DNA of 61,571 nucleotides, filler included, from Platydemus manokwari (taxonomy: Eukaryota): NCBI GenBank assembly GCA_037951405.1. It is 4 parts of 4 records of this genome, joined end to end, with 100 filler letters (N's around TTAATTAATTAA, not from the genome) between each part and the next. Parts side by side here need not be neighbours in the genome. Positions count along the whole stretch, not along the records: positions 40,371 to 52,264 come from JBBMOY010408888.1; 3 more parts are not named here. One strand, 5' to 3'. The notes beneath the pieces were generated by a model. It saw only the letters and a list, made by a program, of their open reading frames with translations, had not been told where the DNA came from and made no database searches. A program made the position numbers and the translations under genes. This document shows, in pieces, positions 2,512 through 52,264 of the stretch. Within the stretch, counting starts at the first letter, position 1, and every line of letters begins with the position of its first letter.

Positions 2512-2900
2512 AGGTCTTGTCCGATAGAAAATGATATTTATTTAACCAATAAAGAAAATATGTAAATTGAGAAATATATACAAAACATCATTCGTCTGTT
2601 AATCCAAAACGTTGAAAATGGTCACCTCACACTTTTACCAACATTCTAGAATTCAATAGAATTCCGTAGGTTTTGAAACGAACCACTTTTCCAAGTCATC
2701 ATTAATCTCTTCAGCGGAGTGAAACGTTTTCCCTCGAATTGAGTTTTTTATAGAAGAAAACAAGCAATAGTCTACGGGGGGCAAGGTGTGGAGAGTATGG
2801 TGGATGTAGTATTACCGTAAAACAGATTTCAGCAAGCTTATTTTGAGTTAAACGTGCCGTGTGTGGTCGAGCGTTATAGTGAAGAAAATGGAACTTTTCA
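2512..2900 (-). mobile_element. Mariner transposase 3' remnant (frameshifted)
   Basis: ORF 2711..3004 contains FLHYNARPHTA...HPPYSPHLAP (mariner HDNARPHT / HPPYSPDLAP, catalytic Asp mutated). A shifted frame continues RGKTFHSAEEINDDLEKWFVSKPTEFY*ILECW*KC. Confidence 0.85.
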
Positions 2901-3511
2901 AAACTTTTTCCAAAGTGTGATGTTTTGTTTATATTTCCAATTTGCATATTGCCTTTCTTAGTTAAATAAACATTATTTTCTATCTGAAAAGACTTTCGTT
3001 TCAATCGTATATATTTGTTTATTTATTTATTTAAATACAGGAATAGATTTTATTATAATCATAGTTTTATTAGAGTTTAATTTTCTCATTTCTACATCGA
3101 TCTATAAATTCCGCGATAACATATTCCATGCTTGGCAAAATCTTCTACGACAGAGTAGACTCGATCAATATCTAATTTAGCAAGCACAATATTCGATTCG
3201 TGCCGAATGACTCATTTTAGTGAGAATATTTATCAGAAACATTTTTCCATTTCACAAATTCAATATTTTAACAAACGGTTTCACTTTTATCTCTGTGAAA
3301 TTTCAAATTTATACTAATTTATAATCAATAATCCACTACTGTCATGATAAAAATGAATATTCAAGAAATACTTTAGAAAATCCATGAGGATAATCTGCAC
3401 TAGTTGTCGTCAAAATTGTACAATAATGAATATATATATATATATGTCAATAAATTCATAATTTCGAAATTTTTTGATTAAATAAATTTATAAAAGACAA
3501 AAAATCATTAC

Positions 3512-3776
3512 CAACCATTAATTAATTTCGTTGACTCTTTCGCTGAGTCTTGATCTCCTTGAGATTGACTCCTTTCTGGTGGACGAGTCAATGGAATCTT
3601 TTCACCATTTTGAGAATCTAAATTGTTTGTAACATTTATTACAGCTGGTTGTTGCGATTTATCATTTGCTTAAATAAATGAAAAAAAAACTATTGTATTG
3701 AAAAATATAAAGAAACATCACCAGCAAAAGGATTGTATTCATCTAATCCATCATACAATACTTCATTTTTTTTCAT
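3512..3776 (-). CDS. SCAMP-like (secretory carrier membrane protein) N-terminal exons, partial
   Basis: Exon 3776-3722 (MKKNEVLYDGLDEYNPFA), 53-nt GT-AG intron, exon 3668-~3512 (ANDKSQQPAVINV...). GLDEYNPF and QPAV match SCAMP N-terminal NPF / QPAI motifs. Transmembrane exons were not found in the window. Confidence 0.55.
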
Positions 3777-5269
3777 TTATTCTACAAAAAAGTTGGATGT
3801 CTATTGAAAATAATTTCTACCGAAAGTTTATGCAGTATGTTACGATCAAAAAATTAATTAATTTTTAAATTGAAGGTTAATGCAGATATAATTGATGCAT
3901 TTAAACGTTATTAAAGCATTGTTAAAATTTATTGTTATTTATTAAATTTATAATTATCTATTTATTTATCAAATATATAATTTATTAAATCTGTTACATA
4001 AATAATGAGATTAATTTATTAAAGCTATCCAATTCATGTTATTAATCTATAGAGATAAACAATTTATTTATTCAAATTAAAACTTTGTATTAAACACATT
4101 ATTGGAGTTTTAAATTTTATAATTTATTATCCATGTCAGGTCCATGAGCGCAATAACTCCTGAAAATTAAATTAATCACATGAGATTCGGCAAATTCATC
4201 ATATTTAAAATAAACTGTTATATCCTATGACGGGAAAACTTTTCATAAATATGATTTGTCCGTCGTTTTGTAATTAGAAGAATATCGAAGCAAAAAATAT
4301 GACAATGGAAATGAATATGCAGTGACACAAAATTCACAAGAAAGACTATGCAAAGATAAATCTAAGAACACTAGCTATAATTTATGCATCTGAAAAATTA
4401 AATGTGTTGGGTTGAGTGATTATCAAACCTACATTAATAATATGAATCATCAACCTTTAAAATTAATTACTAAAATTTTAATTAGAGTTTCCACGGTATT
4501 TTAAAAATCTAATTTGCATCAGCATTGTGATTTAATATATTGTTAAGGTGAAAGCAGTAGTAACATTGAATCACCATGGAAAATGAATAAATCACTATGG
4601 AATAAAAATAAAGTAACAAAAAATTAGTAATGACTCTCACAAAATTCTGGATATATAAACCCAGCCCAAAATTAAGCAAATGCACAAAAATCCGGTGAAA
4701 AATTCAGCACAAAATTTCAGAAACAAAATTTCACCACCAACGCTCAGTACGCGAAAGGTTATTTAACTTCAGTCATCAATTATTGGGATAATCTTCATCC
4801 ACACGGAAATTTCTTCAGTTATCAAATATTGGGATAATTATCAAACTTGGAATTCATTATATCAGTTCAGACAATTCGAATCATTTTTCAATTCATTCAA
4901 CACTTTATTATTATGATGCTAGAGTTAAATTAAAATTAAAGTCAAAGCCGAAAGGATTTGCAATATCTAAATTAATTTTTTTAGTTTATTGTCAGAAGTA
5001 GGGTGCCACTTAGTTCCCTACATCGGTTGTTCTTTTCTTCAGGGCATAACATTAATATCTTTTAAAATTCTTATATTACATATTTGTTAATTTAGTATTA
5101 TAATAAAAGTATTATTACTATTGCCTCATTTTTTATTGCTTTATCGTTATTATATTATCTGAATTATAACACGCAACCTATTATTCTGATTGGGATCAGA
5201 TCATTGGTGGAATCGTCATTTTTCCTGATTTTAATCAATATCAATTTTAAATTATTGATCGTTCAACGA

Positions 5270-5780
5270 GTTTAAACTAGTTGAATTATCTTTAATAAGT
5301 CACACCAAATACTACTTAGCAGCAGGCTAGTAGGATTACATCCAGTGGATCTATCTAAAAATTTATTCGACTTATTATGATGAACATTTGTAGCCCTATA
5401 CACAATTCTATTATGTACTATGGAGATATTTTCAGAAGATTTGGTCAAAGCTAGCAAGTCATCTCCATATGCTAGAATAATAAGTCAGGCGTCATTAATT
5501 TTAAGGGGAATCTGATAACTACTGACTTCACAAATAACAAAATCTGTAGCAAGCAAAGTAAGCTCATCGAAAGAGAACAGTTTTTTACCAGTTAAAATGG
5601 ATTAGTGTTTGTCGATAGGTAGTGATAATTAGTGGTACAATTATTTTAGAAGTTTGATATAATAAATATAGTATTTAAATCACGGCCAATTTTGTGAAAA
5701 GTATAGAAGATGAGACTATGGGGAACACTTGAAAAGTCAAGCCAGATAAGATTAAAATCATTCAATTTTACAGCAACTAT
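5270..5780 (-). mobile_element. Non-LTR retrotransposon reverse transcriptase remnant (RLE-type, R2/NeSL-like)
   Basis: Minus-strand fragments FNLIWLDFSSVPHSLI (cf. LD..nAFgSVpH), NCSLSMSL (cf. QGCPLS.LLF) and ILAYGDDLLAL (YxDD box), interrupted by stops and frameshifts. Confidence 0.7.
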
Positions 5781-7652
5781 CAACAATAAATATACAACTA
5801 TCACTATTACTAAGAAAAAGTGTCTTCTCAACCTATTAGAGGATAAATAAGTGGTGACGATTACAATAAAGACTTGTTTTCTCTCTCTGATAGGGCACAA
5901 ACTCAGTGCATAGTGGTGATTTATGTAGTACTTACTCATCATTATCTATTATCTATTTGATCTAGGGGTAAAAAAGACTCACTTGGGCATTAAGGAATTA
6001 AAAGCATGCCAAATAAACATGTTGATATTGATTTGATAATTTTGATTTTATATTGGCATAGTTGAATATATCGAAATCGAACTCACTTGGTAGGTGAATT
6101 TACAAAATAGTGAGCAATTGAGAACCGTTGAGTTAACTAAAATCAACGATATCACGGTTCACTATTGTTGACATAATGACGGCGACATTATTATGGGAAA
6201 GTGAATTTCTATATGAATTCAAAACATAATGCTCTCAAGAAATTTTTATAGATGATTAACACTGATACAAAGGTTAATTAAATAAAATTTGATGAGTTCA
6301 ATCCTGGAAAGTGTCGTTTGATAAACTCTAAAGTGAAGTAAGCCCTTTTTTCAATACTAAGCTAAGCTGAATAAATAGAGAGAATATGCTTGAACATAAA
6401 TGCATATATGATTTTAAAATCTCCAACGTCCTTGAGTTGGGTAGAATATGGTAAATTCTGTTACGCTACGACAATTACTTCCAATATGTGAGCTAAGCAC
6501 ACAATGAATATTATGATTATTGACTTCGTCATTGAATGATAGCTTTCTTCAATTTAATGGGGCTACAGTGGCTTATTAATGGGTGTATTGTGAGTGTTAT
6601 GAACATATTTATATCTTTACGGGTTGCTCGAGTTGGTTTATTAATTTGATCACGTGGGTTTAATTGTATAGAATTTTATTTATTCATTCTCATATCTTAT
6701 TTTACTGTATCACTTTGCAACAAATAGTAGCCAAAGACAAATTAACAGTCTAGTTAGATTAATGTCGAAAATATTCCCTATCCTAAAGTCTATCATTGCT
6801 TGGATTAATTTTTTAACTCCGTAAAAGTAACCGTTTTCTTTGGAACTGATGAATTCAGATCGCTGTGAAATTACTATAAATTATAATACTGTAAACAGTT
6901 TTGATGAAAAAAATGAACTATATTGTAACACAACTATTCCACGATTTTCAAAATGTACATATTTTAATTATAATTTGATGGTACTTATTCACCTTAAAAA
7001 TTTTAGCTAATGAATAAAAAATAATTAACATGGAAAGATTTTAAAATTAAAGTAGCGTAAATTTACGAAATTAATTTTTCAAATTTCATTTATAATTTTA
7101 CCAATAATAATCAAAACAATTAAAAATAAAACAAAACTAATTTTATTTGATACACTTAGGTACAAAATTTTAAGTTTCTTTATAATCGTATAAATAACAA
7201 TATTTGTTGTGTATGTAACACTTATATTTATATCAAAGCATTCTGTAAAATTTAAGTTAATTTATTTTTATTTCAAATAAATTTCAAATATTTTTACAAT
7301 TATAGTAAGTTTTTGTAAAAGAATTTTACAAATAATCATAATTACTTAATAACTGTACAAATATTAACAATTGCTTAATAAGTATTTTTTTATTACATAT
7401 GTTTATCTAACTTGCTAAAATAAATTTTCATAAATAAATTTGAATATTGTTTATATTTTTCTGTTTCGATTTGTTCCCGTGACTTTTTGTAAAAGTCACT
7501 TGACCAAAAATTGTTATCAGGTGATATTTTAATAAACCGAATGTCCTTTAATGTCCTTTAAAGTAAAATTTAATGTGTTATAGTTGGTTTCTATATAATT
7601 TTAACTGGATGTAAATTAATTTAGCTGATAACAGGCAAACATTGTGCCTGAT

Positions 7653-10600
7653 ATGGATGATGAAAATGGTAGTAATGATAATAAACCCCTGAAAATAAAC
7701 TCAACCGATATTTCAAATGATTTATCCATCAATTTAGCAAGTTTATTGAAAAATCTATCTCAGAATTCTGTTTCGATTTGTGATACACCTGTAACGTCGA
7801 TATCCGAATTAAGTCTTGATATCGAAAACTTCGATCAAAATATTCACCGCAGTAAATCGGGTAAGTTAATAGAGTGACAATCGAAACCCAATTGTTGATT
7901 TTTCTTAATTTATAAGAAGGTGAAGAATTTTATTCTGTTAAGTCGGAATCTTTTCTTAATCAACTTGCGAGCAATGATCGCATTCTCAATATAGATTATA
8001 TTAATGGCAAACGGAATAAATCACAATACGATGTCGACATTAACAAATCATTGCAAGATGTGAAACTCATTTCCAGATTGACGAATACGAGATTTTCATC
8101 TAATATCGATGCATTGAGTTCGATGCAAATGCAAAACATATCGGCCATCAAGTCTTTGTTGGACAATCAAGTAATTAATGGAACAATTGGTGAACGTTGT
8201 AGCAAATAAAGAATGTATTTTTCGCATTTTAGAATGGCCAAATTTATTTACTTGTCAAAAGCGATGCCGTTCAAGCGATAGATTCGACAAATAATTTCAC
8301 AAATTTATTGGAATCGAATAATTATTCACATCAAACGCAATTTTCACCATCTGAAATCGGTATTAATTTGATGAAATTAATTTACTAATATAAATGTTTA
8401 ATTTCTTTTTTAATTTTTTTAATTTTAATTTTTTAAAAAAATTTTATTAGTTAAGTTTTTAAAACTATTTCCAATTCATATAAATTAACTACGATGTATT
8501 TTTATTAACAAATATGATTATATAATTATATAAAATAGGTTTTTTATTTAATTTCACAATTTTTGGCTTTGATTTCAGAAAAAAATTTCAATTAGCAAAA
8601 CCCTCTAAATCAAAATTTATTTTTCGAATATTGAAATATAATGAATGTTTGACACTATTATAGGAATATTAATGAATGAAAGTACGATATTTAATAAGAA
8701 AAAAATTATTTTGATAAAAAACCATTAAATGTGTTCTGGTGTAATATTGAGGCTTAAAGTTCTTATGTCATTAATTGAAAAGAATCGGCTTTGTATTTTG
8801 AGCATTTTTTAATTTTCGTACAAGTTTTTTGGATATTGAATTGGCATTGAAATTTTATTTGAAAACTTAATGAGTTACCGAAAAACAAATTTTGAAATAA
8901 TAGAATTGTCTTTCCCAATTTTTTTGACCCAGGCGGTGCGAAAGAGTAGTAAAAATTATATACATATATAAGCTAGAATTTGTGAAAGTTGAAGTTGATG
9001 ATATAATATTGATAATAATTTGGTTTTGAACGGTCTGATCGAGTGACAATTTCGAACAATACCTGACGCAATAATGACGAGTATTTAAGACAAGAAATAA
9101 ACAGATTTTGTTGACTTATTGGCTGATATTGAATTTATGCTGAACGCTACCAATACAACAGTCGACGAAATTTTCAGCAGCCGAAATAGTTTTTGGTAAA
9201 GTATTTATAAAGAATGGTAAGAAAGACGAAGTACGGAAGAAGATATAAATGAACATCAGTTGAGTAATCAGAGAAAACAAAATCAACGGAATATGGAAAA
9301 CAACGGAGGGCTAAATATGGCGAGAAGAACAAGGGAGAACAGCAAACGAAAAGAAAATACAACGTAGGCGAATGGGTTTAATAAAAAGAGAAAACCCTAA
9401 TAAAATGAAGATAGATATGAACGCCGATATCAAATAATAGAAATAATTCACGAGATGAGTTACAAATTGAAGAATGAGGCCTGGAAAGTGCTAATAAAAA
9501 TATAGGGTGGATAAGGATTTTAAAAGAGAGGGGATGTAAGGGAGATTCGTAAATGGAAATGTGAATGTGGTATGTATTGTGTCATCAGTAATAAGATGTG
9601 TATAACATCGTAATAGTGTTAAATAAATAATTCCGTATAAAGACTTAATGTTAATTATAATATTGATGATAATAATTATAATTTAATATTGATAATAATT
9701 TGGTTTTGAGCGGAATATAAAAATTGTCAATATCTGCATTTTCGATTAATTATACAATGTAGTTCAATTTTGAATTATTTGGAATATATTCATCCAAAAA
9801 TTATGATTATAATATAAAATATTCATAACCAACACAACGGATATCGTACATTTGTATACAAATACAGAATATAATCAATCGTATTAAAAATAAATGTAAT
9901 AATTAATATGAAATTTTTAATCACATTGCAGTATGGATTTCAAACAATTATACAGTGTTTATTATTTATTTCTTTATCGTTTGATTTGTAATTCGCGTAA
10001 TTCGCTTTTATCTTATTCAGTTTGCTTGTAGAGACATAATATATCGTTTTTAAAATAAATGCGTACCATTGAACAAATATGTTGTTTTGCACTGTCGGAA
10101 TTCAGTGATAGAATTTATTACAGATATCCTGTTGTGAAAAGTCTTATTAAAATCACTTATTATTCTCGTTAAAAATGATAGAATTACTTTGAAGGTTTAT
10201 TTTAAAATTTAATATATAACATTATATGCATTGCATAATGTTATTACAGTACACTCAACATATAAAATATATTGCACAATACGCTAATTGTACGAAGCAA
10301 CCAGTACCAGTTTGGACAGGATTAATGAATGAAAAAATGATCTTGAATTTGTAATAAACGAAAATGTTTGATGTAGAATAGAAACGATTTTGTGTGTTAT
10401 ATTATTATAAGCGCTATAATATTATCATCAAAACTAATGAAAAACTTATTTTAAAAAATCTTGTAAAATTTATTGATCTTCTAATTTTGGCATCTTTCTA
10501 CAAAACAATGGTTTTCATATATTTACTCAATATTTTTTCGTAAATCACATTGCGTACGTGATTAATCTGTTTTTTTTTAATATTTTTTTGAGTATTATCA

Positions 10601-13600
10601 ATTCATTCCAGTTTTAAAAATAGTAACAAAGAGATGTGTGTTCTATATATGTTTTTCTCAACACCATTATCCTAGTTCTAAAATTGAACTAACTTCTATA
10701 TATTCAATGAATTGATTGGAATTTGGCAATTAAGATTTTTGTTTATATTATCAGATAGGTATATGACATTCTTAATAATTGATAAAATTGTTGATTTGTC
10801 ACTGATTGCATTGAAGTTTTAAATAAATTTTGATTTCATTTAAACAAAATAATATCGGTTGATTGTTAATTATTGATAAATAATTAAGTTCTAAATTAAA
10901 AATCATTGCATTGTGATTTACTTTAGATTTTATTTCGCATCTAATATACATCCAGATTTAGATAAACTTATCAATCATTATACTTTCACTATTAACAAAT
11001 TTTACATTACATTCTACAATAAATTATCTACAATCCATTTTCAACCTATGTAACATTCACTTAAGTTTATCAAAGGTTATTCTTACTGTACATTTTTTTT
11101 ATCAAATTTTTATTATCTAATAATCATCAATGGCTAAACTATATATCAATTCAATTTCATAAGGTTAATCTTTCATTTTCTTTTTTATTTTTCGAGATTT
11201 TTTATCAATTTTTTATTATCTAATAATCATCAATGGCTAATTTATAAAGTCAATTTCATAAGGTTTATCTTTCATTTTCTTTTTGATTTTTCGAGATTTT
11301 TTTTATCAAAAACATTAACTTTAACGGTATATTGATTAAAATAATTGTTTCTAATTTTTCGTATAAATTTTTTTGATTAAAATTATAGATGTTTTCTTAT
11401 TTTAAAAACATAACAAATAAAACCAATTATAGAAATATATTTATTAACATACATAATTTGAAAATTTACAAATTTGCATCTTCCCTGATAAAACTAAAGA
11501 CTGGTAATATAAATATGTAAATTATGGAAATGTTCATATATATATATATATATGAAATAGAAAATTATTTTTCAAAATGAATCAGAAAAAAATCGATATA
11601 ATTCTACAAAAACTGCCTGTAAAATAAATAAATATCAATTTTATTTTCTTCATAAATTGATATTATATTTTTAATTTGTCCGATTGTATGATTTTGATAT
11701 AAATTTTCTATGGGAAACTATTTCCCATTTTTCAATAGATCTATTAGAAATTTTAAATATCAAAATGGTAATTTTTGAAGTATTGACTTAGAAAGTTTAA
11801 ATTTGTAAGAAAAAATCAATTAAGCTTTCATTTTTCTACGAAAAATTAGTCTTGATTTTTTAATGTTCAGAACGAATTAAAGAAAATTTCAGTTTTAAAT
11901 GGATTTGATCTGAAAAACGTTGATGCACGACATATTGATGGAATCATTCTTATAATTTGTCAAAAATAAGTATTTTCTGACTTTCGACAGACAATGAATT
12001 TCATTATTTTTATTCATTTTGTCAATGTTAAGAAGATTAATTCGTTTTCACAATTTCTATGCAAATCAAATCGATTATATACATCTGATAATCTATGTTA
12101 AAATGATAAAGTAATAATTAAATTATTAATAAGTGTTTTGGAAAAATTAGGAAGTTCTCCATATTGTTGAGATAGTTTTTTTTAAATAGCGGGTTTTGTT
12201 ATAACAGATAAAGCAATGAAAAATATTTTTAGGGATAGTAGAAGACAGTTTAAACAAGTTCGTGTTTACCTGTTCGGTTTTTTACTTTTTGCATGACCAA
12301 GTTTTATTGTTAAGTAGATGAAATCGAATTTTGTAATGTGCAATTTTATTTTATTTTTAATTTATTCCTCTGCTAGGAGTTGAGATGGCTTCGTCAGATA
12401 ACTGTACAACAATTACAAATTTAAACAATTCTACTTTGATGTTAGCTGCTCATCAATTGCAAATTTCTAATAATCTGTCAACAGCTGAATTAATTCAGAA
12501 AATATTGGAATCACCACAGGCTACTAGTTCTGGCAATAATTTGGAATCAATGATAAACAATAGAAAAATTGATGAATCCTCAATTTCATCTTTGGTTCAA
12601 ACTTATCGAGACTCGATTCATTCTGATAATATTAATAATCAATATTATGAATGTTCTCTTGATTCAAACCATGAAGCAGAAATTACTCTGCTCGTCGATG
12701 ATGAAAATTCAGTTTCCAATTCACAATTTCCTCTTAATTCACAATCAATTAAACAAGAAAAACAAATTCTAATATTAAAAGGAAAATCTGATATTGAATC
12801 ATTGCCAAATACCAGTCGCATTGCCAATGATTCTATGAAAGAACATTTGACATTGTTTTCAAACCAAAATAACACATTAGAAATCAATAATGAAATGTAT
12901 AATGACGTTTCTAATAATTTCACACAGTCAAATACAGGAACGTCAACAATGGGAATGAAAAAAAATCATACTACCAGTAAAGGCCAGAAACGACTTAAAG
13001 TGAAACCGTCAAAAATTATTGAACCCAGCTGTCAATCGGACAGTAGTTGCAAAGCCTATTCTCCTAATTCACCAATATTTACATGTAAATTTCTAATAAT
13101 TATAAATCACTTATCACATATTATAAAAAAACGATTGTTTTTGTCATTGTTTCATTGGATTAAAAAGTAGTATATTGTGATATTTTTAGTGACTGTGCCA
13201 CATATAGACAACAGTGACTCTAAAGATTATATTAACAATGATGGAGAATTTAAAGAATTGAAGAGAAAATCAAGTCACAATGAAGGTATTTAGATTTCCG
13301 TTTGCATCAATGATTTAATTTTTGGAAGTTGAAAGACGCCGGAGAGATCGAATTAATACCTGGATAAGTGAGTTGCAAAATATGTTGCCAAACAATGAGA
13401 AAATGACTTTAAATCGGAGCAAAAGTCACATTTTGAAAGCGGTTTATGATTATTTTAGAGTTCAAACCGATCAATTTAATGATCTTCAAGTGAAATATGA
13501 AAAAGTTAGTTGATGAAAATATAAAATTTAAAGCAATGTTTTAATAATGAAAAATAATGTTTAATTCAATGATTTGATGATATCTGAATAGCAATTGGTG

Positions 13601-41525: not shown

Positions 41526-43508
41526 ATTCTACTACTTTGACATATCTTGATCCTGAGAAAATTAAGGAAGATATCAGAAAAATTCTGGAAGAAGAAATGT
41601 AATTATTTTAATTGATATTGTTATAAAAGTTTAATGATTCATTGAATATACCATGAATTATCTCATAGTCGAAATATGGAGTTTTCGCGCAGAGTTTATT
41701 ATTTAGAAAAATGTAATCTCATTGAAATAAAAATAAAAATATGTAACTTATTTATTCCAACTTTCAAATACTTTTTTTAATAATAATTAATGAATAAATT
41801 AGATCACTGTTTGATCGATATTAGAATTAGTTTGCCTTTAAATTCAATAAGTATGTGCAACCATTGCGATTGATTTTCTAGAAATTATCACTATCTGTAG
41901 CAGATTAAATAAAATAAAATATTAATGAATTATATTATATTAAATTACTAACATTTCAATCAAGACATTGTTTATTGGTAAAGTAAATTTGTCTGACGGT
42001 AAGACCTATATTGATGGAGTAATTGTAACTCTCGCTGGTTGTAAATGAACTGATATTTGACAGAATATGTGCTACCAAGCCTAAAGGAGCGCATTTTGTT
42101 GATGAAAATCTTGATGCTGACAAGTGTCTTAACATGAAGAGATTTTAGTATTATTGATAAATAAGGATGATAACTTCCCAGTTTTCTTCTCACTTGATGG
42201 CGCTCTATGTTTTATTTGGTATTACTGCATTATTATTGTATGCCATTGGTTAGACCAGTAGTTTTCATATGTAATGATCATATAATACTTTCTGTATTCA
42301 TAATTTCATTTTCGTAGGTTTTTTAAAAGAAAATTACTCTACTTACCAGTTCCTCCTCGATTCAATATTTTCAAATTATTCTTTTCTTTAATATATGATT
42401 TTTGTTCTTGGTAGAATATTTTTATAAATGTCATGTGAGTTGTCTTTAGGTATTACGTAATTAAATAATGACAACTTTGAAATTGATGGTATTTGTTTGA
42501 TCCTTTTGAGATTCTATTCGATACAGATTTGTTGGAAAGTTTTTCATTAAGTTAAATTAATATGATTCTAAACCATGTCTTCTTAAAGCTGACTGATAAA
42601 GTATTTGAATTTTTTGAAGGTTTAGTTTTTATTAAATATAATTACTATCGACCAATATTATACATTAAAAATTTGTTTCTAGTCTTTCCGGTCGCATTCG
42701 ACCCGTTGAATATCAATCCAAAGATGTCAATGGAGTTTCTCATCAATCTCAAACAACTGAAATAGAGAGTCCAATACCAGAATCTTACAACACTAGTCGG
42801 GTGATTGGTTCAGAAATTTTCGACAAAGATCCACCTACTCAAGTGCAATCAACCATTGAAAATTCATCGAAACTAGAACAACAACAAATTGAGGAAGATT
42901 TCCAAAGAAAAGAAACTATTGTAGAAATATCTGATACCTTCGACCGAAAAGAAGCAATTGTTGAGCCTAATCCGAACGTTGATCGTAAATATTCTTATCC
43001 CAATGATAAAGATTACGTATTGAACGATCCGTCTCTTAATGAAATAGAAACCATTACTACTGTTGAAGTGAAAAAGCCCGTTAAATCGTACAAATTCAAT
43101 GAAACCATTGAAAATCTCCATCACGGAATTCCTGCTCATATGCATAATTCTGATAAAAATTCCAAACTCCGTGGATCGGATACGAAAAAGATGGTAATGC
43201 CATCCAAACACGAATCGTTTGATTCACAGATCGGTATTGTAATATCACAGAAAAATAACAGCAATAGTGACTCATTGCGCGATGAACCATTACCTCCTTT
43301 GACTGAGGCTGAACGTCAAACCAAAGAACGGGAACTGTTGTCGGAATTATTCGGTCAATATCAATCGAATAATAATTTGAAAAATCGTACAACAACTTTA
43401 CCATGGGATGCAAATGAACATGTAAAACCAAAAGTTCGAAATAGTCCGCCTAGTATTCGATCTATAGATTTAGGTAGATCTGAAGAAATCGAGGAAATAA
43501 TGTTATAA
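41526..43508 (+). CDS. LCA5: Lebercilin / LCA5-like ciliary protein, last two exons
   Basis: Exon 41526-41598 splices in phase to 42683-43508. Motifs YKFNETIENLHHGIP (cf. LCA5L YSFTEATENLHHGLP), ELLSELFG (cf. LMEQLFG) and terminal EEIEEIML* (cf. DEIEEVAL). The N-terminal coiled-coil exons are not in this contig. Confidence 0.75.
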
Positions 43509-46317
43509 GCACAATTGTATTGTTTAGTGTGTGTGTGTGTGATCTAGAAATATCTTTTTTCCGTGGAAGTGCATCGAAAAAAGTTTTTATCAGTCATTTT
43601 CGCACCAAATTTCTACATCAAAAAATATAAATAATAATAATAATAATAATAATGATAATATGTAGAACGGTTCTAGTTGTGATTGTGATGTACTCCATTG
43701 TTAAAGATATCCGAATTAATATTTTTAAGTCTTTCATTAACAAGTAGAAGTAGAACACAGTGTGTTGTTTAAATTTTTACTTATATTATATTTGTAAGAA
43801 ATTCAGTATGTCAATAAAATAATTTCACTGTGTTGGATTCTTTGATATGGGTATTCCCAATATTAAATTTCAATTTTAAAATGACAAATATGAATTTTTA
43901 GATTTTTGAATTGGTTTTGAGACTATCTTTGATTACCTCCCCTCATTTGTTCTGCTAAATGTTGACTGACGGCATCAACATGGTGTAGATCTTGTCATAG
44001 CTTTCCAAATTGGAATAATCACTCGACTAATATTTATGTGTTTAATCTGCATATAAACCATACCAGGTTCAATATGATAGTCGGGTCTATAAAATTCGTA
44101 TTCAAATTCTGGACACACATTTGTAAATTAGATTTGAGTGAATGTGTATTTGTACAATCTGGTTTTGAAAAAACCCATTGCATCTATACGAGAACGTTAG
44201 TGTGAAATATTTGTAATTTGTCGTTCAAATGGTGAGTGTATGTATAATGAAGACAAACGTTCAGTCTAAAAGTCTGATACCCCGAAAATTAATAAAATAA
44301 TTTAGAAAACAAACTTGAAAAAATTATTATTAAATTCTTTTGAATACGAATCCAATGCATCTACGATATCTGAATATATATGTTTTTTCAGATGAACTTT
44401 TAGACTGAAAAATATCAACACTCCTGGGACAATAATATCATGACAAATTGTTAAAAAATTGAAGAATGATGGAACTTATAACCATTGGCTAAGCATTCTT
44501 TGATTTGTGGTCCATCATGTAATCAGACCTTGGTACTGTAAGCCGCTGCTATTTTAAAAACCATTCGTTGAAAACTAACTAAAATATAGTCCCTCTAAAC
44601 TTCATATTATTTAAGTTTCATATAAAATATCAGAATCATTCGATAAGAAACATCACTTAAAATGAGAAATTTATAATTTCTAAAATTTGGAGCAAAATTT
44701 ATCATAAAGAATTTGACAATTTACTATAAATACCAGAGCAAATTTCTGATAATCTGAAATATTAACTGATTCATTATAATATTTTCATTCAAATTGAAGC
44801 ATAAGTTCTCTGCCAAATATGTATATTTGTGTTTTGTTCTCTTTTTTGACGATTTGTGGTTGACCAAAATTTTAATTTATGATTTGACAATAATTACTGC
44901 CAGGACCATAATTATAAAAAAAGTCTGCAACATTTTTTATATTTATAAAAATTAAAAGAAAAATGAAAAAATGTTTCTAAAATCGATTTCTAAATCCAAC
45001 TTGTTTTTATACTGAACTTCATGATTTGTGTATTAATGTTGATACACAAAGAAATTTGTCAGAAAATAAAAGTTACACCAAATAAACTGTTTGGATATGT
45101 GTAATATATTTTAAGAATTTTTCTTTAATTATAATCGGCAGGCTAATGACATACTCTAATAGTGAAACAGAGGATAATGAAATAATATCAATGGGTGCTA
45201 GATCATATGAATAATGGAAAAATTGAAATGCCGAAACATGCTACAATACACAATAAATATGGGCTAATATAAAATGAAAATGATAAATAGAATTTTTCTC
45301 ATAATGCATCGAAATGACTGACCTCTGAAGACATCAATCTATCAATTCTTCTTCATTTAAATTAATATTGTCTATTATTTATAATTGAATTAATTAAGAA
45401 TATATTAATTACGTTCTTCAAAAATATAGAGTAAATTTAAGATAATTCAGTAATAATAATTATCATAATTTTATTTATATTAATAATCATTGGTGGCTTT
45501 ATATTGTTTTCAAATTAAGGCTTCTAAAATATTAGATGGTAATAAATCCTAAGAAAGTTCTCATTATCATCAATAAATACTAAATGATTCACCACCTAAT
45601 CATCATTAAAATAGAAATTCATTTTTTTGGTTCTGCAAATTGAAGAATGATCAAATAAATTATGATTAAAATTCTGAATATCATTTGCTACATAATTTTC
45701 AATTTGTAATATAATGAAAGTATTAAGCCTTTTATTCAGAATAAAGAAATGTTAAACGTATTTTAAAGTTGGAAAATGGCTTTTCGTCTCAACTGATCTC
45801 ATCGACAGAGTCAGAATATGTGATAGAGCTATTGTCATGATTTTTAAGATTAGGAAATATTTTTATGTCATTAATCAATTTTATAAATAATTAATCCATG
45901 GTTGTCTTATATTTAAAAGAATATCTCTGGTTGTCTCCAGTTGTTATCGAGAATTCAGTAGTGGAGCTTTATCCTAATCTTTAATTGATAATTCTCTATA
46001 TATAATANNNNNNNNNNNNNNNNNNNNNNNNNNNNNNNNNNNNNNNNNNNNNNNNNNNNNNNNNNNNNNNNNNNNNNNNNNNNNNNNNNNNNNNNNNNNN
46101 NNNNNNNNNNNNNNNNNNNNNNNNNNNNNNNNNNNNNNNNNNNNNNNNNTTCATTGTGCATTTACAAAATATATTTTCATTATGTAACATAATTTTTGGA
46201 ACTTTGGAATATTTTTATCAAGTCAATCATTATAATAATCGAAATGTGATAATTCTAAAGGTAAATCATTGAAAAGTTCAGGTACGCTCTATTCAATGAC
46301 GATTATGTAATATCCTC

Positions 46318-46325: not shown

Positions 46326-46367
46326 GTATATAAGTAATCGAGATTAAAACACGAGTATCAATTGAAA

Positions 46368-46826
46368 ATGATGAAGATTTATAGTTATATTATTGTCATT
46401 GCTCTGTATTTCACAGTTACCACTGCACTTGATTTGAAACATTTTACCGATTGTTCACCATCTCGAGTCATCAAGCGTGTCAGTATAACTCCGTGTTTAC
46501 ATGAACCATGTGCATTAATTAAAGGAATGAATTCTTCGATTTCAGTTGAATTTGATTCAAAAGATGCTATAACATCAGGAATTGTAAAGGTTAGAGGAAT
46601 TAAGCTCGGAATACCAATGCCGTTCAATTTACCAGAACCAGAATTGTGTAAAGGTCTCAAGCCGAGTTGTCCTACCAAACCCGGAACAACAGTAACTTAT
46701 TCGAAATCAGTTTTTGTCCAAACTTATTATCCAGATTTACGATTATCAATAAAATTCATATTAAGCGATCAAAACTCGAAAGTTTTAGCTTGTGTTTTAT
46801 TCCCTTCATCTATTATCAAAGGATAA
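46368..46826 (+). CDS. NPC2: NPC2 / ML-domain secreted sterol-binding protein, intronless
   Basis: Hydrophobic signal peptide; six cysteines in NPC2 spacing (FTDC, TPC..EPC.L.KG, LCK...CP, AC); YPD motif; NSS glycosylation sequon. The first ATG is at 46368 (the track start is TTG). Confidence 0.93.
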   Translation: MMKIYSYIIVIALYFTVTTALDLKHFTDCSPSRVIKRVSITPCLHEPCALIKGMNSSISVEFDSKDAITSGIVKVRGIKLGIPMPFNLPEPELCKGLKPSCPTKPGTTVTYSKSVFVQTYYPDLRLSIKFILSDQNSKVLACVLFPSSIIKG

Positions 46827-47561: not shown

Positions 47562-47632
47562 CACATTGACGGACAAAAGGAACAATTGAAGTTCGAAATT
47601 GACGGTTAAAGTCGCAAGTGTCCGTCAACGTG
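47562..47632. mobile_element. 71-bp piggyBac-like miniature element
   Basis: TTAA-CACATTGACGGACA...TGTCCGTCAACGTG-TTAA: 14-bp TIR with one mismatch and a TTAA target duplication. Confidence 0.8.
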
Positions 47633-47890
47633 TTAATAATATTGTATTTCTATTAACATGGATGATTTTTTGAATATTTTGTTGATAATGGTCTTAATGT
47701 TTCTTGTGAAATGCTTTTCAAATAACATGATAACTTTAGAAGGATAATTATATAACTTTTATTTTTGTGTTCTCTATTTCGGATATCATTTATTATCTTT
47801 TTGAGTGACAACAAAAATAGGAATTATAACTCGAATAGCAGAATATCAAAATAATTTTATTACTCATAAAAATACATTCGATTTCATGAT

Positions 47891-50312
47891 TTACGATTCA
47901 TTTAATTGTTCAATAACAGCCTGAATAAAAATTCTATCAACACAGAGACCTTCTGATCTGTTTTCGGTTTTTGTCTGAATAAATACACATTGGTGAAATT
48001 TAGCCAAACCCTCGGATGCTTGTTTTACAATTTCTGTCAAATAGTCTGTGGAGAAAAAATAACTTCTCGTCCCATCCTGACGAGTGTACCAGTTATCGGC
48101 AAGTTTAGTCTGTCTTCCAAATCTCAATTGAGCTTGATCGTAAAGTCCATAATCACGGAACAACAATTTGCCACCGGGTTTAATAATCCTAAAATGTTTT
48201 CAATCAATTAGAGAATTATTGGTGATATATTATAAATTCTCAATCGAAATTGATTGGATATATTTTAATATAGGGCTTGCAACATGTATGACTCATCAGC
48301 GAATGGTTTCGAATAACAATTAATGCAATGAAATTTTGTTTTTATTCATCACGTGATAATTAAATTGATAGATTTCAAAAATTATTATGTCTAGTTTACA
48401 ATAGTTGGACGGCAAAAATTGCTAGCCACAATGAAACACGTGTTATTGGTGAGTAAAGAAGTACTTTAAATAAAATATCTTGAAGATAAAATATAAAATA
48501 ATTCAAAAATGATGAATTTGTTTTAACTAATTATCTTAATTATACCGCAGGATGAAAACCAAGATCAAACTTACGAGAAGAGATTTTTCAATGCAGAAAC
48601 GTGTTTATCTGGATGAATAGCAGACAAAACGAATATGCATGTGACAACGTCAGCCTTTTCCATTTTAGAAATGAGCTTGTCCTCTGTAATATCCGCTACA
48701 AAAGCCGTGGCAATGCTTCTCTGATTGGCTTGTTCATAGCGAGCATCTTTTATCAATAAATTCACAGCCACCGGTGAGAAGTCACAACAATAATATCGAC
48801 ATTTGTTATCGACATGATCGTTGATTTCATCAAGAAGCGGTAAAAAGAAATTGCCCACCCCACAACCCACCTCCAAAAGCACTGGAGATTGATCACCGTA
48901 GATTTCCGACACTTTTGATGGATCATAAAACGGTGATAAATCGTTGAATTCTCTCAACAACCAGTGACGATCTTTGAAGAATTTCGTTTGATTTCGCTTG
49001 TAAAATAAATCCCAATTTTTTTTGGCATCCTTCTCTAGTTTTCTTATTTGAAAATCTTTGACTACAGATTGTCCCTGCCTTTCCAATTGTTTCCTTTGAT
49101 CTTCGTTTAAAAGACGTTCGATTTCAGTTTTCGTATGATTATCATCATTAATTTCATCAGTCGTTTGCAAAAGATTGCCGTTTGGATTCGATATTTTTGC
49201 ATTCACATCAATTACTAATTTATTTTCCAAGATGGCACTAATATTCTCTGATCTATCAATTGTTTTAAAAGATTCACAGTCCAAAGCATTACTTTCTCCT
49301 TCACTTTTATTTTCGTTTAACTCTACTTTCTTATTTTCTTTATCTTTTATTTCGTTCTCACTACATGCTTCATTTTCTTCCTCATCATATTCCTCTTCCT
49401 CGTTACTTTCTTCCTCATCACTTTCCTCATCCTCGTCACATTCTTCTTCATCGCTTTCTTCTTCCTGGTCACTTTCGTCCTCCTCATCCTCCTCTTCTTC
49501 GATATCTTCATTTTCGTTTCTCTCTTCCCCTTCACTGTCTGAATTTAATTCCAAATCCAACCCCGCATAGATATCATCATAAGTTAATTTTTTCTGAGCA
49601 TTGTGATCTTCGATTTCCAAATCCATTGAATGAAGTAGCTCTTCTTGGCACTTCAGCATTTCTTGACCAGTTTTACAGTAAGAATATGCATCCAAAATTG
49701 ACTTATTCAGCTTCATGAAACTATGACCCCATCCAAAGCAATTCATTACATCTTCAGCTTGTTGGATTTTTCCAGATATTGCTAGAAATCCTGCCAAAGC
49801 TTCGGCACAATTGAGTTTGCCAGGTTTACCATAGTTGACGGGATTTGCTGCTAACAGATATGGCAACAATCGAGCATGTTTATATTTTAATCTGCGAAAA
49901 TCGGTTGTTCCAACTTGAGCCCAACTACAATCGACGACTGCCAATCCTCCTTGTAACATGATATCAAAATCAGTTTCTGGATTTATACATTCTGTGGCAT
50001 TTGGTGCCAACACAATACCATTAAACTTTTCATTCATTTTTAGCAATCTAATCCTTCCTAATCTAACTAGTTTTCTACCACTGCAAATCTTTGGATTGCA
50101 TTGTTCCAAATCCCACATAGCCAATTTTACATCATTTTTCTCATTTTTATGATTGACTATGATTAATAGTTCAAAGTTAAAGTAATAAATAAATATGAAT
50201 CACCTGGATCTAGGGAATAACATGAACCAGTTTCTGATTTCGAATCTCTATGATAATTTCGCTGATTTTTAAAAATTTTATTACCATATTTAGGTTGATG
50301 TTTTCTACTCAT
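47891..50312 (-). CDS. TSR3-METTL6: TSR3-METTL6 fusion: 18S rRNA aminocarboxypropyltransferase + acidic linker + tRNA N3-methylcytidine methyltransferase (~662 aa)
   Basis: Exons 50312-50204, 50156-48575, 48188-47891 (1989 nt, GT-AG, in phase). TSR3 motifs: LAMWDLEQCNPKICSGRKL, VVDCSWA, RLLPYLLAANPVNYGKP.KLNCAEA, FGWGHSF. METTL6 motifs: KNWDLFYKRN..FFKDRHW, LEVGCGVGN, CDFSP, FVLSAIHPDK, KPGG.LLFRDYGLYD, RQDGTRSYFF, EGLCVDRIFIQ. Confidence 0.95.
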
Positions 50313-52264
50313 AACTGGCAAAAAAAATTTCAAATCTACCTATATTATAGATAATATTATTTAAACAATATTGAAATTTATCTCATTATTTTTATTAAAA
50401 TATTTGCTGTGGAATTAAGCAATTTACTATGCACATGTAATAAATCTAATATTATAACTTGATTTTCAATTTCAATATTATTTAAAAAATTTCAAACTAT
50501 TTTTGAATTACATCTTACCATAGAACTTACATGTTCTTTGATAGCTAAAGCAACAAAATTTTGTCTATTGTATCAAAATATTTTAGATGATAAATGAATG
50601 ATCTATAAAAAGCATTATAGATATTTTAAATGTCGGAGATAATTTTTGTTTCTAAAAATAAGTATTTTACCAAGTTCAGAATTTTAAATTCTAAAAAACA
50701 TAATTCAACTTCGTTCAATTTATTACTTGAGCATAATAAAATTCAAAAATTAATTAAATAAATTTTAATATTTTTTAATTTAATATTTATTACTACTTTG
50801 ATATACATACTAAACTTAATTGAAACTGGTGTTAAAACTAAAGCATTTGCAGATGCAGTCGAAAATATTTAATTTTTAAGTCTCAGTTTGGGCCAATTTA
50901 GTATATTTTTCATGATGAATATGAAAATATTTAGATACTAATATAAAAGTAGGTAGTGCTACAGAATTGTATGCGTTTATACATTAACTATGATTAAAAG
51001 CTTATGTAGGTGATATAATTGCACTTATTAGAATAGAAGGCTGAAGTCATCTATCAAATACAACTCTTGAAGACCTATCCTTACATTCTTGACATTGACA
51101 ATCGTTAACAATTATTTCTATTTAAATTTTCAATTATGAACCCAAATATGAAATATTAATTTATTAATATGTAAAAAATTAAAATTTATTACAATTAAAT
51201 CAAATTCATTAAACAAGCAATTCCTAATTGAAAATCAATTTTTCTTTCATCCAGAAAATCAAATAAAAAATATGAGAAATTCTTATTTCAAATCATTACT
51301 AATAATTTGCAGTGATTATTCTAAAAATTTTATTTAATAAATGCTATTTAGTATATATTAAACTTTTATTTCCAAAATTACTTTTTAATTCGAATGATTA
51401 ATTGACATTAGTTCATAAAGTAAGTTCACAAAGGCTATAAAACTACATTAATTTGATTATATTATTTGGAATCGATATCTTATAAATAATACATAAAATA
51501 ATTAATAAAATATCCGTGGTTTATGAGAAATTGGAGCAGAATAAATAAATAAACCATATTATATAAACTGGATCATTTTCGTTAAAAATAATCTCTTATA
51601 AATAATCTTTGGTTAACAATTGGCTTCGAGTATTAACTTTCAGAAATTAATATTTATTAGGAAACCTGCGATCTTCAAACTTGTAACGGCTCGTATTGCA
51701 TTCAGTAATCCCTTGTATTAATTCAAAATCACAGATATCGATAGAATTGTTCTAATGATCTAATCTAAAGAACATTATTCTGCTACAATGACTATGGTGA
51801 ATGATTTTGAAATCCACAAATTCTATTGACCTTGTTTATTTATGGTTTTTAATTGTCTTTCAAATAATTCCCTTACGGAAATTGCTGTAAGATGACAGTT
51901 ACTGCAAAATTTAAGTGACGAACAAAAGTAATATAGAAATATATTATAGAAATTTGAATGATAATTAAACATTTGAAAATCCGTAATGAAAATTTGTATG
52001 ATCTGTAATAATCAACAATGAGATTCTCTTGTCGCAAATATAGCAAGATATGTACTAATGGATTTGGAAACAATTAAGCGCAAAGATTAAGTTCTTATGT
52101 CTATGTGCGAAAATTTATGATTTAGACACTGTTTATATATTGTAGTTTGTTGCATTTATTTTGCGTTTTGGACCAAATTTTCCTAACTTTTTGTTTTTAC
52201 AACTTGTTAGGGTGTCCACGAGTACTGTTGAAAAGCATTCCCCCCCATTGTTGAATGACGCGGT

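What the first reader, a model, noticed from the sequence alone, without database searches (positions are those of the whole stretch)
47891..50312. Single-polypeptide fusion of an rRNA modifier (TSR3) and a tRNA modifier (METTL6)
Seen: one stop-free reading frame inside a single 1.58-kb exon runs from a complete TSR3 domain through an acidic linker into a METTL6-type methyltransferase, so the join is not a gene-prediction splice artefact, and no N-gap lies within it. Key motifs of both halves look intact (TSR3 DCSW and AANPVNYG; METTL6 FFKDRHW, LEVGCGVGN, CDFS, RDYG). Established: TSR3 uses SAM as an aminocarboxypropyl donor to complete m1acp3-psi in 18S rRNA near the P site, whereas METTL6 uses SAM as a methyl donor for m3C32 of tRNA-Ser together with seryl-tRNA synthetase; in human and yeast the two activities are on separate genes. 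Inference: a bifunctional enzyme that uses two different SAM chemistries and may couple late 40S maturation to tRNA anticodon-loop modification. I do not recall this architecture being described, but cannot search to confirm.
Basis: partly seen in the sequence, partly recalled or inferred. Interest (0 to 1): 0.9.

Follow-up and report, generated by a model that had tools for sequence, protein, structure and literature searches.

The report
Flatworm TSR3–METTL6 fusion gene
The window holds a real three-exon gene whose 662-residue product joins the 18S rRNA enzyme TSR3 to the tRNA methyltransferase METTL6, but the same fusion already sits in public databases for about 25 flatworm species, so this is one more orthologue of a flatworm-wide fusion.

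Summary
On the minus strand, three exons with canonical GT-AG borders (50312-50204, 50156-48575, 48188-47891) encode 662 residues. One 1582-nt exon runs without a stop from a complete TSR3 domain, through a roughly 135-residue acidic disordered stretch, into a METTL6-type methyltransferase. Both halves match solved structures (archaeal Tsr3, E 2.5e-26; human METTL6, E 1e-37). Both keep every mapped cofactor, catalytic and RNA-contact residue except two peripheral ones.

The novelty claim fails. The same architecture is deposited for trematodes, cestodes, a monogenean and Macrostomum. An exhaustive search of 1.84 billion representatives found it in no other phylum. The METTL6 halves of 15 fusions sit on one side of a well-supported branch, which fits a single origin.

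A related species has the same single exon with only in-frame indels. A fasciolid contig that begins with the trematode spliced leader carries the whole fused ORF, so the fusion is one mature mRNA there. The "acidic linker" is the acidic C-terminal tail that stand-alone TSR3 proteins normally carry.

No evidence supports mechanistic coupling. I found no RNA data for this species and no paper discussing the fusion.

The parts
50204..50312 (-). Exon 1: start codon and basic N-terminal 36 residues (plus the first base of codon 37)
   Evidence: The ATG at 50312 and donor G|GTGATT are read from the sequence. The N-terminus aligns with that of full-length relative P0002.
48575..50156 (-). Exon 2 (1582 nt): TSR3 module, acidic linker and the N-terminal two thirds of the METTL6 module in one open frame
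   Evidence: The same exon, with the same donor position, is present in related species locus L001.
49636..50124 (-). TSR3 module: Fer4_RLI-like N-domain (50026-50124) plus Ribo_biogen_C (49636-50016). Holds C61-S62-G-R-K65, D112-C-S-W115 and AANPVNYG 139-146.
   Evidence: Pfam 1.3e-9 and 2.1e-44. Solved Tsr3 structures 5ap8 (2.5e-26) and 5apg (1.5e-18). pLDDT 70-90.
49120..49527 (-). Disordered acidic linker (fusion residues about 247-382). Its core is 64% D+E and includes an imperfect in-frame 33-nt tandem repeat at 49370-49501.
   Evidence: pLDDT 31-42 and no secondary structure. Composition. TRF score 152. Only in-frame indels against L001. Stand-alone TSR3 proteins have a comparable acidic tail.
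48575..49116 (-). METTL6 module, part in exon 2 (human METTL6 residues 12-176): helix with F405, NWDLFYKR 417-424, FFKDRHW 429-435, motif I LEVGCGVGN 464-472, CDFS 494-497, IFVLSA 544-549
   Evidence: Human METTL6 structures 8owx/8p7b/7f1e/7ezg, E 1e-37. Residue mapping.
48189..48574 (-). Intron 2 (386 nt, GTAAGT...TTTTAG), inside the METTL6 module
   Evidence: The alignment to human METTL6 stops at residue 176 in exon 2 and resumes at 178 in exon 3.
47891..48188 (-). Exon 3: C-terminal third of the METTL6 module (human residues 178-264; RDYG 575-578, QLRF 584-587, TRQDGT 599-604, R649/F651) and stop codon
   Evidence: Human METTL6 structures, E 9e-24. Coordinates.
50157..50203 (-). Intron 1 (47 nt, GT...AG)
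   Evidence: The reading frame is restored across it and the joined sequence aligns with P0002.

Best explanation
This is a genuine protein-coding gene of a flatworm. It is orthologous to the TSR3-METTL6 fusion genes found across Platyhelminthes. Its 76-kDa product is two autonomous SAM-dependent RNA-modifying enzymes on one chain.

The N-terminal module is a SPOUT-type TSR3. It should transfer the aminocarboxypropyl group of SAM to the hypermodified pseudouridine of 18S rRNA helix 31 in late cytoplasmic pre-40S particles. The C-terminal module is a Rossmann-fold METTL6. It should methylate N3 of C32 in tRNA-Ser while that tRNA is held by seryl-tRNA synthetase.

The two modules are tethered by a disordered acidic segment, which is the ancestral acidic C-terminal tail of TSR3. 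The fusion most likely arose once, by end-to-end joining of the two genes before the split of Macrostomorpha from the other sampled flatworms. It has been kept since then, and in the species that could be checked it looks like the only TSR3 gene.

Shown: the anatomy, homology, residue conservation, phylogenetic range, and single-mRNA status in a fasciolid. Inferred: both catalytic activities, their substrates, and the independence of the two modules.
For: Gene model with canonical splice sites and 662-aa ORF. Pfam domains of both halves in one exon.

The TSR3 half matches solved Tsr3 structures. By the residue numbering of PMC4872110 it keeps the SAM-shielding Trp (W115 = ScW114/VdW73), the proposed catalytic acid (D112 = ScE111/VdD70), S62 (= ScS62), K65, R132, and the L/P/L/A contacts to adenine.

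The METTL6 half matches human METTL6 over residues 12-264. By the numbering of PMC11479938 it keeps F32, W45, Y49, R51, F57, R60, motif I, D110, F111, I157, F158, V159, A162, D189, Y190, R199, R213, Q214, G216, T248, R259 and F261. Only H195 is changed, to Q (and the alignments).

All named best hits of the methyltransferase half are METTL6, not METTL2 or METTL8.

The same architecture occurs in about 25 flatworm species and in no other phylum among 1.84e9 representatives. The 15 fusion METTL6 halves lie on one side of a branch, SH-aLRT 97.

A related species has the identical single-exon layout with only in-frame indels. Synonymous sites are saturated while amino-acid identity stays at 82% (TSR3), 49% (linker) and 70% (METTL6).

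A fasciolid contig begins with the last 20 nt of the trematode spliced leader and carries the whole 628-aa fused ORF.

AlphaFold gives two folded modules and a linker with pLDDT below 50. Stand-alone TSR3 proteins have acidic tails (median 85 residues, 39% D+E).

There is no stand-alone TSR3 in Schistosoma. The two short flatworm 'TSR3-only' models are on short contigs: the Hydatigera model stops 44 nt before its contig end, and the Protopolystoma model is a partial entry on a 1356-nt contig.
Against: No RNA data exist for this species: the only public run holding the sequence is DNA. No biochemical data exist for any flatworm fusion.

One RNA-binding residue of yeast Tsr3 (R60) is Ile here, and H195 of METTL6 is Gln. 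Whether flatworms also keep a stand-alone METTL6 was not tested. Independence of the two modules is inferred only from the disordered linker and the lack of a predicted interface, which is weak evidence.
Confidence: 0.8

Rival explanations
1. Functional coupling. The fusion exists because the two activities are coordinated: for example TSR3 brings METTL6 to late pre-40S particles or translating ribosomes, or the acidic tail regulates one module in response to the other's substrate.
For: The fusion has been retained across the sampled flatworm lineages, with the same domain order in all 19 aligned fusions. Both enzymes are thought to act in the cytoplasm (TSR3: PMC4872110; METTL6 beside cytosolic SerRS: PMC11479938), both use SAM, and both act on RNAs that meet in the small subunit's decoding region (own knowledge). 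The linker frame is preserved despite rapid divergence.
Against: The linker is disordered and varies between species from about 124 to 276 residues between anchor motifs. It corresponds to the tail already present in stand-alone TSR3. No interface was predicted, though the tool says this is no evidence either way. Residues that contact SerRS (F32, R51) are kept, which points to the ordinary METTL6 mechanism. All other sampled eukaryotes keep the genes apart.
Confidence: 0.1
2. The fused ORF is a precursor. The polypeptide is cleaved in the linker, or alternative transcripts with internal start or polyadenylation sites are made, so that cells actually contain separate TSR3 and METTL6 enzymes.
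For: Long disordered acidic linkers are protease-accessible. Shorter database isoforms exist for Schistosoma (439-475 aa). Flatworms use spliced-leader trans-splicing (PMC3795323).
Against: There is no stop codon after the TSR3 part, so a TSR3-only mRNA would need premature polyadenylation. The fasciolid mRNA carries the spliced leader at the 5' end of the whole fusion. The shorter Schistosoma isoforms still carry methyltransferase Pfam hits.
Confidence: 0.06
3. One half is a degenerate, catalytically dead appendage (a pseudoenzyme) kept only as a scaffold.
For: Fused domains are sometimes relieved of selection. Neodermatan fusions change F111 to I or V and carry long inserts after motif I.
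Against: Every mapped cofactor and catalytic residue is conserved in the window. Nearly all are also conserved in all 19 aligned fusions. Protein identity is kept while synonymous sites are saturated. No stand-alone TSR3 was found in flatworms to take over.
Confidence: 0.03
4. Assembly or annotation artefact: two neighbouring genes wrongly joined.
For: Only one public run holds the sequence, and it may be the assembly's own data.
Against: The join lies inside one exon with no gap. One 2997-nt contig spans it with zero differences. A different species has the same exon. The architecture recurs in about 25 independent genome projects and in one trans-spliced mRNA contig.
Confidence: 0.01

Closest known systems
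Database-deposited flatworm TSR3-METTL6 fusion proteins. Examples: Echinococcus multilocularis 'methyltransferase protein 6' (P0005, 585 aa), Fasciola hepatica 'putative ribosome biogenesis protein TSR3' (P0003, 582 aa), Schistosoma japonicum KAH8870839 (P0382), Macrostomum lignano BOX15_Mlig016718g1 (P0021, 634 aa).
   Same: Same domain order (Fer4_RLI, Ribo_biogen_C, acidic linker, METTL6). Same conserved motifs in both halves. The METTL6 halves group together on one side of a well-supported branch.
   Different: The window has the longest linker of those compared (276 residues between the NPVNYG and NWDxFY anchors, against 124-221). It lacks the long insert after motif I seen in trematodes and cestodes. 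It keeps F111 (CDFS), as do Macrostomum and stand-alone METTL6, where neodermatans have CDIS or CDVS. It is 34-56% identical to the named fusions. Its closest relatives are an unnamed contig (P0001: 79% over the best local BLASTP stretch, 66-67% overall) and a UniParc entry (P0002, 55%).
Stand-alone TSR3, the 18S rRNA aminocarboxypropyltransferase (yeast Tsr3, human TSR3; archaeal structures 5AP8, 5APG; PMC4872110)
   Same: Full domain with the SAM-binding and catalytic residues, plus an acidic C-terminal tail.
   Different: Here the tail runs on into a second enzyme instead of ending. The residue equivalent to yeast R60 is Ile (alignment).
Stand-alone METTL6, the tRNA-Ser m3C32 methyltransferase (human structures 7EZG, 7F1E, 8OWX, 8P7B; PMC11479938)
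   Same: Aligns with human residues 12-264. Includes all three elements of the m3C RNA-binding domain, motifs I and II, the C32-contacting residues and the SerRS-contacting F32 and R51.
   Different: Its N-terminus is not free but attached to TSR3. H195, an i6A37 contact, is Gln. There is a short insert after motif I.
Abp140-Trm140 of Saccharomyces cerevisiae (from my own knowledge, not checked here)
   Same: Another case in which an m3C32 methyltransferase of this family is made as the C-terminal part of a longer fusion protein.
   Different: The N-terminal partner there is an actin-binding segment joined by a +1 frameshift, not an RNA-modifying enzyme. It is unrelated in origin.

Membership tests
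TSR3 (18S rRNA aminocarboxypropyltransferase, SPOUT class) | Ribo_biogen_C domain preceded by the Fer4_RLI-like N-domain | tested here: met
   Pfam 2.1e-44 (cut-off 29.9 bits, score 150.8) and 1.3e-9.
TSR3 (18S rRNA aminocarboxypropyltransferase, SPOUT class) | Sequence homology to Tsr3 proteins with solved structure | tested here: met
   5ap8_A E 2.5e-26 over 161 residues; 5apg_A E 1.5e-18.
TSR3 (18S rRNA aminocarboxypropyltransferase, SPOUT class) | Trp that buries the SAM methyl group (ScW114/VdW73) and the D/E proposed as catalytic base (ScE111/VdD70) | tested here: met
   D112 and W115 in the motif VVDCSW. Both are invariant in all 20 aligned fusions.
TSR3 (18S rRNA aminocarboxypropyltransferase, SPOUT class) | Conserved basic RNA-binding residues (ScR60, K65, R131) | tested here: inconclusive
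   K65 and R132 are kept. The R60 equivalent is Ile in the window and in P0002, but Arg (Lys in Macrostomum) in the other aligned fusions. In yeast only the triple mutant was defective.
TSR3 (18S rRNA aminocarboxypropyltransferase, SPOUT class) | acp transfer to m1-pseudouridine of 18S rRNA | not testable with these tools
   Needs primer extension or mass spectrometry after knock-down, or an in vitro assay.
METTL6 (tRNA-Ser m3C32 methyltransferase; METTL2/6/8 family, IPR026113) | Class I methyltransferase core with motif I (E-x-GCGvGN) and the motif II acidic residue D110 | tested here: met
   LEVGCGVGN 464-472 and D495. Pfam Methyltransf_12 2.3e-11. Human METTL6 structures E 1e-37.
METTL6 (tRNA-Ser m3C32 methyltransferase; METTL2/6/8 family, IPR026113) | m3C-specific RNA-binding domain: WDLFYK helix, FFKDRHW substrate-binding loop, internal insertion and extended beta-hairpin with the C32 contacts (F57, R60, F158, Y190, R213, F261) | tested here: met
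   NWDLFYKR 417-424, FFKDRHW 429-435, F430, R433, F545, Y577, R600, F651.
METTL6 (tRNA-Ser m3C32 methyltransferase; METTL2/6/8 family, IPR026113) | METTL6 subfamily rather than METTL2 or METTL8 | tested here: met
   In a search that admitted proteins of 284-905 aa, every named protein among the best 120 hits of the methyltransferase half is METTL6 (40-51% identity). The SerRS-contact residues F32 and R51 are kept. No METTL2/8 sequences were put in the tree, so this rests on hit ranking.
METTL6 (tRNA-Ser m3C32 methyltransferase; METTL2/6/8 family, IPR026113) | SerRS-dependent methylation of C32 in tRNA-Ser | not testable with these tools
   Needs biochemical assay or m3C mapping.
Flatworm TSR3-METTL6 fusion family | Both domains in one reading frame, TSR3 first, joined by an acidic low-complexity segment | tested here: met
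Flatworm TSR3-METTL6 fusion family | Common descent with the other fusions | tested here: met
   The METTL6 halves of 15 fusions, window included, lie on one side of a branch with SH-aLRT 97. The inner topology recovers cestodes and trematodes as groups. The tree is rooted at midpoint only.
Flatworm TSR3-METTL6 fusion family | Expressed as a single mRNA | tested here: inconclusive
   No RNA run holds this species' sequence. The feature is met in a fasciolid: contig L002 starts with the spliced leader's last 20 nt and holds the full 628-aa ORF.

The most novel reading that the evidence does not exclude
The TSR3-METTL6 fusion is a shared derived character of Platyhelminthes and the only source of both activities there. 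It is kept because tethering matters: for instance it may deliver METTL6 to nascent 40S subunits or ribosome-bound tRNA-Ser, or let the acidic tail gate one activity by the other. That would make it a natural 'Rosetta stone' linking P-site rRNA hypermodification with anticodon-loop m3C32. It would also be a lineage-specific feature of major human and livestock parasites.
Probability: 0.1. Interest if true: 0.7.

Novelty: new member of a known kind. Interest (0 to 1): 0.38.

Why it matters
For this window, the finding is a correctly read gene that is an orthologue of proteins already in public databases. The wider pattern has more value. Two RNA-modifying enzymes that are separate in every other sampled eukaryote have been one gene in flatworms since at least the split of Macrostomorpha from the other sampled flatworms. 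No paper in the searchable literature mentions it, and the databases name the protein after one half or the other.

That gives three uses. It offers a clean phylogenetic marker. It flags an annotation problem, because half the function is hidden in each record. It also supplies a testable gene-fusion hypothesis of a functional link between TSR3 and METTL6, in organisms where RNAi is routine (planarians, schistosomes).

Without evidence of coupling, the default reading is a neutral end-to-end fusion of two independent enzymes.

Tried and rejected
1. RNA evidence for this species. The look-up of sequencing runs (kind rna) returned a single run. Read laying showed it to be DNA, because its contig includes both introns. 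Transcription could therefore not be checked directly.

2. Complex prediction of the TSR3 module against the METTL6 module of the full-length relative P0002. Score 0.00, tool verdict 'no answer'. It is not used as evidence for or against docking.

3. dN/dS between the window and L001. Synonymous sites are saturated, so no ratio could be computed. Only dN (0.12, 0.39, 0.22) and protein identities are reported.

4. Ancestral neighbourhood. METTL6 of Lineus and Lingula, and TSR3 of Physella, have no copy of the other gene within 10 kb. A conserved neighbour pair in other spiralians is not seen. This does not exclude a transient adjacency in the flatworm stem lineage.

5. Stand-alone flatworm TSR3. 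The only short flatworm models are Protopolystoma (233 aa, partial, on a 1356-nt contig) and Hydatigera (285 aa, ending 44 nt before its contig end, with the same neighbours as the Echinococcus fusion). I take both as truncated fusions, on direct evidence for Hydatigera and by inference for Protopolystoma.

6. The methyltransferase gene next to the Echinococcus and Hydatigera fusion is not METTL6-like.

7. ESM Atlas feature search. Only generic methyltransferase clusters below 0.9; uninformative.

9. Rfam and tRNA scans of the piece found nothing.

10. One broad paper search was badly designed and uninformative.

11. The organism's name is coded in the tools. I infer a free-living flatworm from the nearest relatives but did not establish the species.
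Full report
**Observation**

The piece is AT-rich eukaryotic DNA, with GC 15-39% per 500 nt. On the minus strand a 517-codon open frame (48571-50124) is flanked by two short coding pieces. I rebuilt the gene from the sequence.
- Exon 1 is 50312-50204.
- Intron 1 is 47 nt (GT..AG).
- Exon 2 is 50156-48575 (1582 nt).
- Intron 2 is 386 nt (GTAAGT..TTTTAG).
- Exon 3 is 48188-47891.

This gives 1989 nt, 662 residues and 76.3 kDa. There is no N in 47700-50600.

With the local base composition, 8.2% of random codons would be stops. An open frame of 527 codons has probability about 2e-20, and the 170-codon linker alone about 5e-7.

The only public run that holds the sequence is a DNA run. Its assembly gives one 2997-nt contig over 47614-50610 with zero differences, so the join is continuous in reads. 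The run may be the assembly's own source.

**What the two halves are**

Pfam finds Fer4_RLI (1.3e-9) and Ribo_biogen_C (2.1e-44) at the start of the exon-2 product and Methyltransf_12 (2.3e-11) at its end.

The first 175 residues of that product match the solved Tsr3 proteins of Sulfolobus (5ap8, 2.5e-26) and Vulcanisaeta (5apg, 1.5e-18). I used the residue numbering of the paper that identified Tsr3 as the acp transferase (PMC4872110). By that numbering:
- The Trp that buries the SAM methyl group is W115, and the acidic residue proposed as catalytic base is D112.
- The Ser/Thr at the acp carboxylate is S62. Two of the three basic RNA-binding residues are K65 and R132.
- The third basic residue (yeast R60) is Ile here.

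The last 190 residues of exon 2 match human METTL6 residues 12-176 (1e-37). Exon 3 matches residues 178-264 (9e-24), so the alignment continues exactly across intron 2. I used the numbering of the METTL6-SerRS-tRNA structure paper (PMC11479938). By that numbering:
- Every residue named there for SAH binding, C32 recognition and SerRS contact is conserved.
- Three of the four i6A37 contacts (R199, T248, R259) are kept. The fourth, H195, is Gln (and the alignments).

In a search restricted to the methyltransferase half that admitted proteins of 284-905 aa, all named proteins among the best 120 are METTL6. None are METTL2 or METTL8.

**The linker**

AlphaFold2 on a 20-sequence alignment gives pLDDT 70-90 for the TSR3 module and 60-90 for the truncated METTL6 part. 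It gives 31-42, with no secondary structure, for exon-2 residues 200-335. The core of this stretch is 64% Asp+Glu. Its DNA is an imperfect in-frame 33-nt tandem repeat.

Stand-alone TSR3 proteins from fungi, animals, plants and protists end in a comparable acidic tail, with a median of 85 residues and 39% D+E among 86 proteins. The 'acidic linker' is therefore the ancestral TSR3 tail. The fusion is a simple end-to-end join to about residue 10 of METTL6.

**Relatives**

A search with the exon-2 product returned proteins of 500-634 aa with both Pfam sets. They come from Fasciola, Opisthorchis, Clonorchis, Calicophoron, Paragonimus, Echinostoma, Heterobilharzia, many Schistosoma, Echinococcus, Hymenolepis, Rodentolepis, Mesocestoides, Schistocephalus, the monogenean Cichlidogyrus and the free-living Macrostomum lignano. 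Depositors called them either TSR3 or METTL6. Every non-flatworm hit was a stand-alone TSR3 of about 300 aa.

HMMER over 1.84 billion cluster representatives found both halves in only seven representatives. Five carry flatworm names (Anoplocephala, Cichlidogyrus, Macrostomum, Schistosoma, Fasciola). The other two are unnamed contigs, P0001 and P0016, which resemble the window and the trematode fusions.

The closest relatives are an unnamed contig and a UniParc entry.
- P0001 is 79% identical in the best BLASTP stretch and 66-67% overall.
- P0002 is a full-length 545-aa entry at 55%.

A maximum-likelihood tree of the METTL6 halves puts all 15 fusions on one side of a branch (SH-aLRT 97) against 21 stand-alone METTL6 proteins. 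Cestodes and trematodes come out as groups within the fusions. This fits one origin.

Both halves are strongly conserved across the fusions. The linker varies from 124 to 276 residues between anchor motifs, and the window's is the longest.

**Is the fusion real as an expressed product?**

Locus L001, from a different species, has the same exon. It shows an acceptor, TSR3, an acidic tract, the METTL6 N-part, and a donor at the same codon. It differs from the window only by in-frame indels. Synonymous sites are saturated, while protein identity is 82% (TSR3), 49% (linker) and 70% (METTL6).

Locus L002 is a 2641-nt contig whose product falls in the 90% cluster of Fasciolopsis buski. It carries the entire 628-aa fused ORF with no intron. 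Its first 20 nt are identical to the 3' end of the 37-nt trematode spliced leader listed in PMC3795323, so it is a mature trans-spliced mRNA. The Echinococcus gene spans 2.7 kb with introns on a 7.4-Mb chromosome-scale scaffold.

No RNA run exists for the window's own organism.

**Only copy?**

A search with the Schistosoma TSR3 half, restricted to proteins of 100-317 aa, found no stand-alone Schistosoma TSR3, although many Schistosoma proteomes are in the database. Two short flatworm models turned up.
- The Hydatigera model stops 44 nt before its contig end, and its neighbours match those of the Echinococcus fusion.
- The Protopolystoma model is a partial entry on a 1356-nt contig.

I read both as truncated fusions. 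In S. japonicum the records named TSR3 and those named METTL6 belong to one 90% cluster. I did not test for a stand-alone METTL6.

**Mechanism**

The best-supported reading is two autonomous enzymes on one chain.
- The TSR3 module would add the acp group to the 18S helix-31 pseudouridine in late pre-40S particles.
- The METTL6 module would add m3C32 to tRNA-Ser held by SerRS. Retention of F32 and R51 argues that the SerRS-dependent mode is kept.

Coupling of the two processes is possible but has no support. The linker is disordered and variable, and a docking prediction gave no verdict. METTL6 and TSR3 are not neighbours in a nemertean, a brachiopod or a mollusc, so how the fusion formed remains unknown.

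**Novelty and verdict**

The architecture is already visible in NCBI and UniProt for about 25 species, so the gene here is a new member of a known kind. I found no paper that mentions the fusion.
- TSR3 and METTL6 co-occur only in reviews and unrelated gene-list papers.
- No paper holds METTL6 with Schistosoma.
- No paper holds TSR3 with Platyhelminthes.

As a flatworm-wide, flatworm-restricted gene fusion it is a modest, apparently unreported evolutionary observation and a testable hint of a functional link. The window's own gene is ordinary. Interest 0.38.

Noticed in passing
window 47567-47640: A roughly 74-nt element bounded by a 15-nt terminal inverted repeat (AACACATTGACGGAC ... GTCCGTCAACGTGTT) lies just 3' of the gene. 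In the DNA run its summed word depth is 6,000-11,000, against about 17 for the gene. It is therefore a very high-copy, MITE-like repeat.
   Followed up: partly
window 46362-46826 (+): A single-exon 154-aa ORF with a hydrophobic N-terminus and a Pfam ML domain (E1_DerP2_DerF2, 2.5e-21), i.e. an NPC2-like lipid-binding protein. An assembly gap (46008-46149) lies just upstream.
   Followed up: partly
window 42801-43508 (+): A 235-aa ORF rich in Ser/Asn/Glu with no Pfam hit, in the region with the highest GC of the piece. It is possibly an exon of an unknown gene.
   Followed up: no
window 49370-49501: The acidic tract is encoded by an imperfect 33-nt (11-codon) tandem repeat of four copies. In-frame slippage probably explains why this species has the longest linker of all fusions compared.
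   Followed up: partly
protein P0269 (Podochytrium sp., 1541 aa): A TSR3 domain at residues 4-278 of a model named 'Solute carrier 26'. This is either another TSR3 fusion in a chytrid or a merged gene model.
   Followed up: no
L004 (Echinococcus multilocularis) 1901-8706 and L008 (Hydatigera taeniaeformis): In both cestodes the fusion gene is preceded by the same two genes: a TPR protein and an unrelated class I methyltransferase on the opposite strand. This synteny showed that the Hydatigera 'TSR3-only' model is a fusion cut by the contig end.
   Followed up: yes
alignment of fusions, region after motif I: Trematode and some cestode fusions carry a variable 20-50-residue insert between motif I and motif II, and they replace F111 (CDFS) by I or V. 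The window, P0002 and Macrostomum look like ordinary METTL6 there.
   Followed up: no
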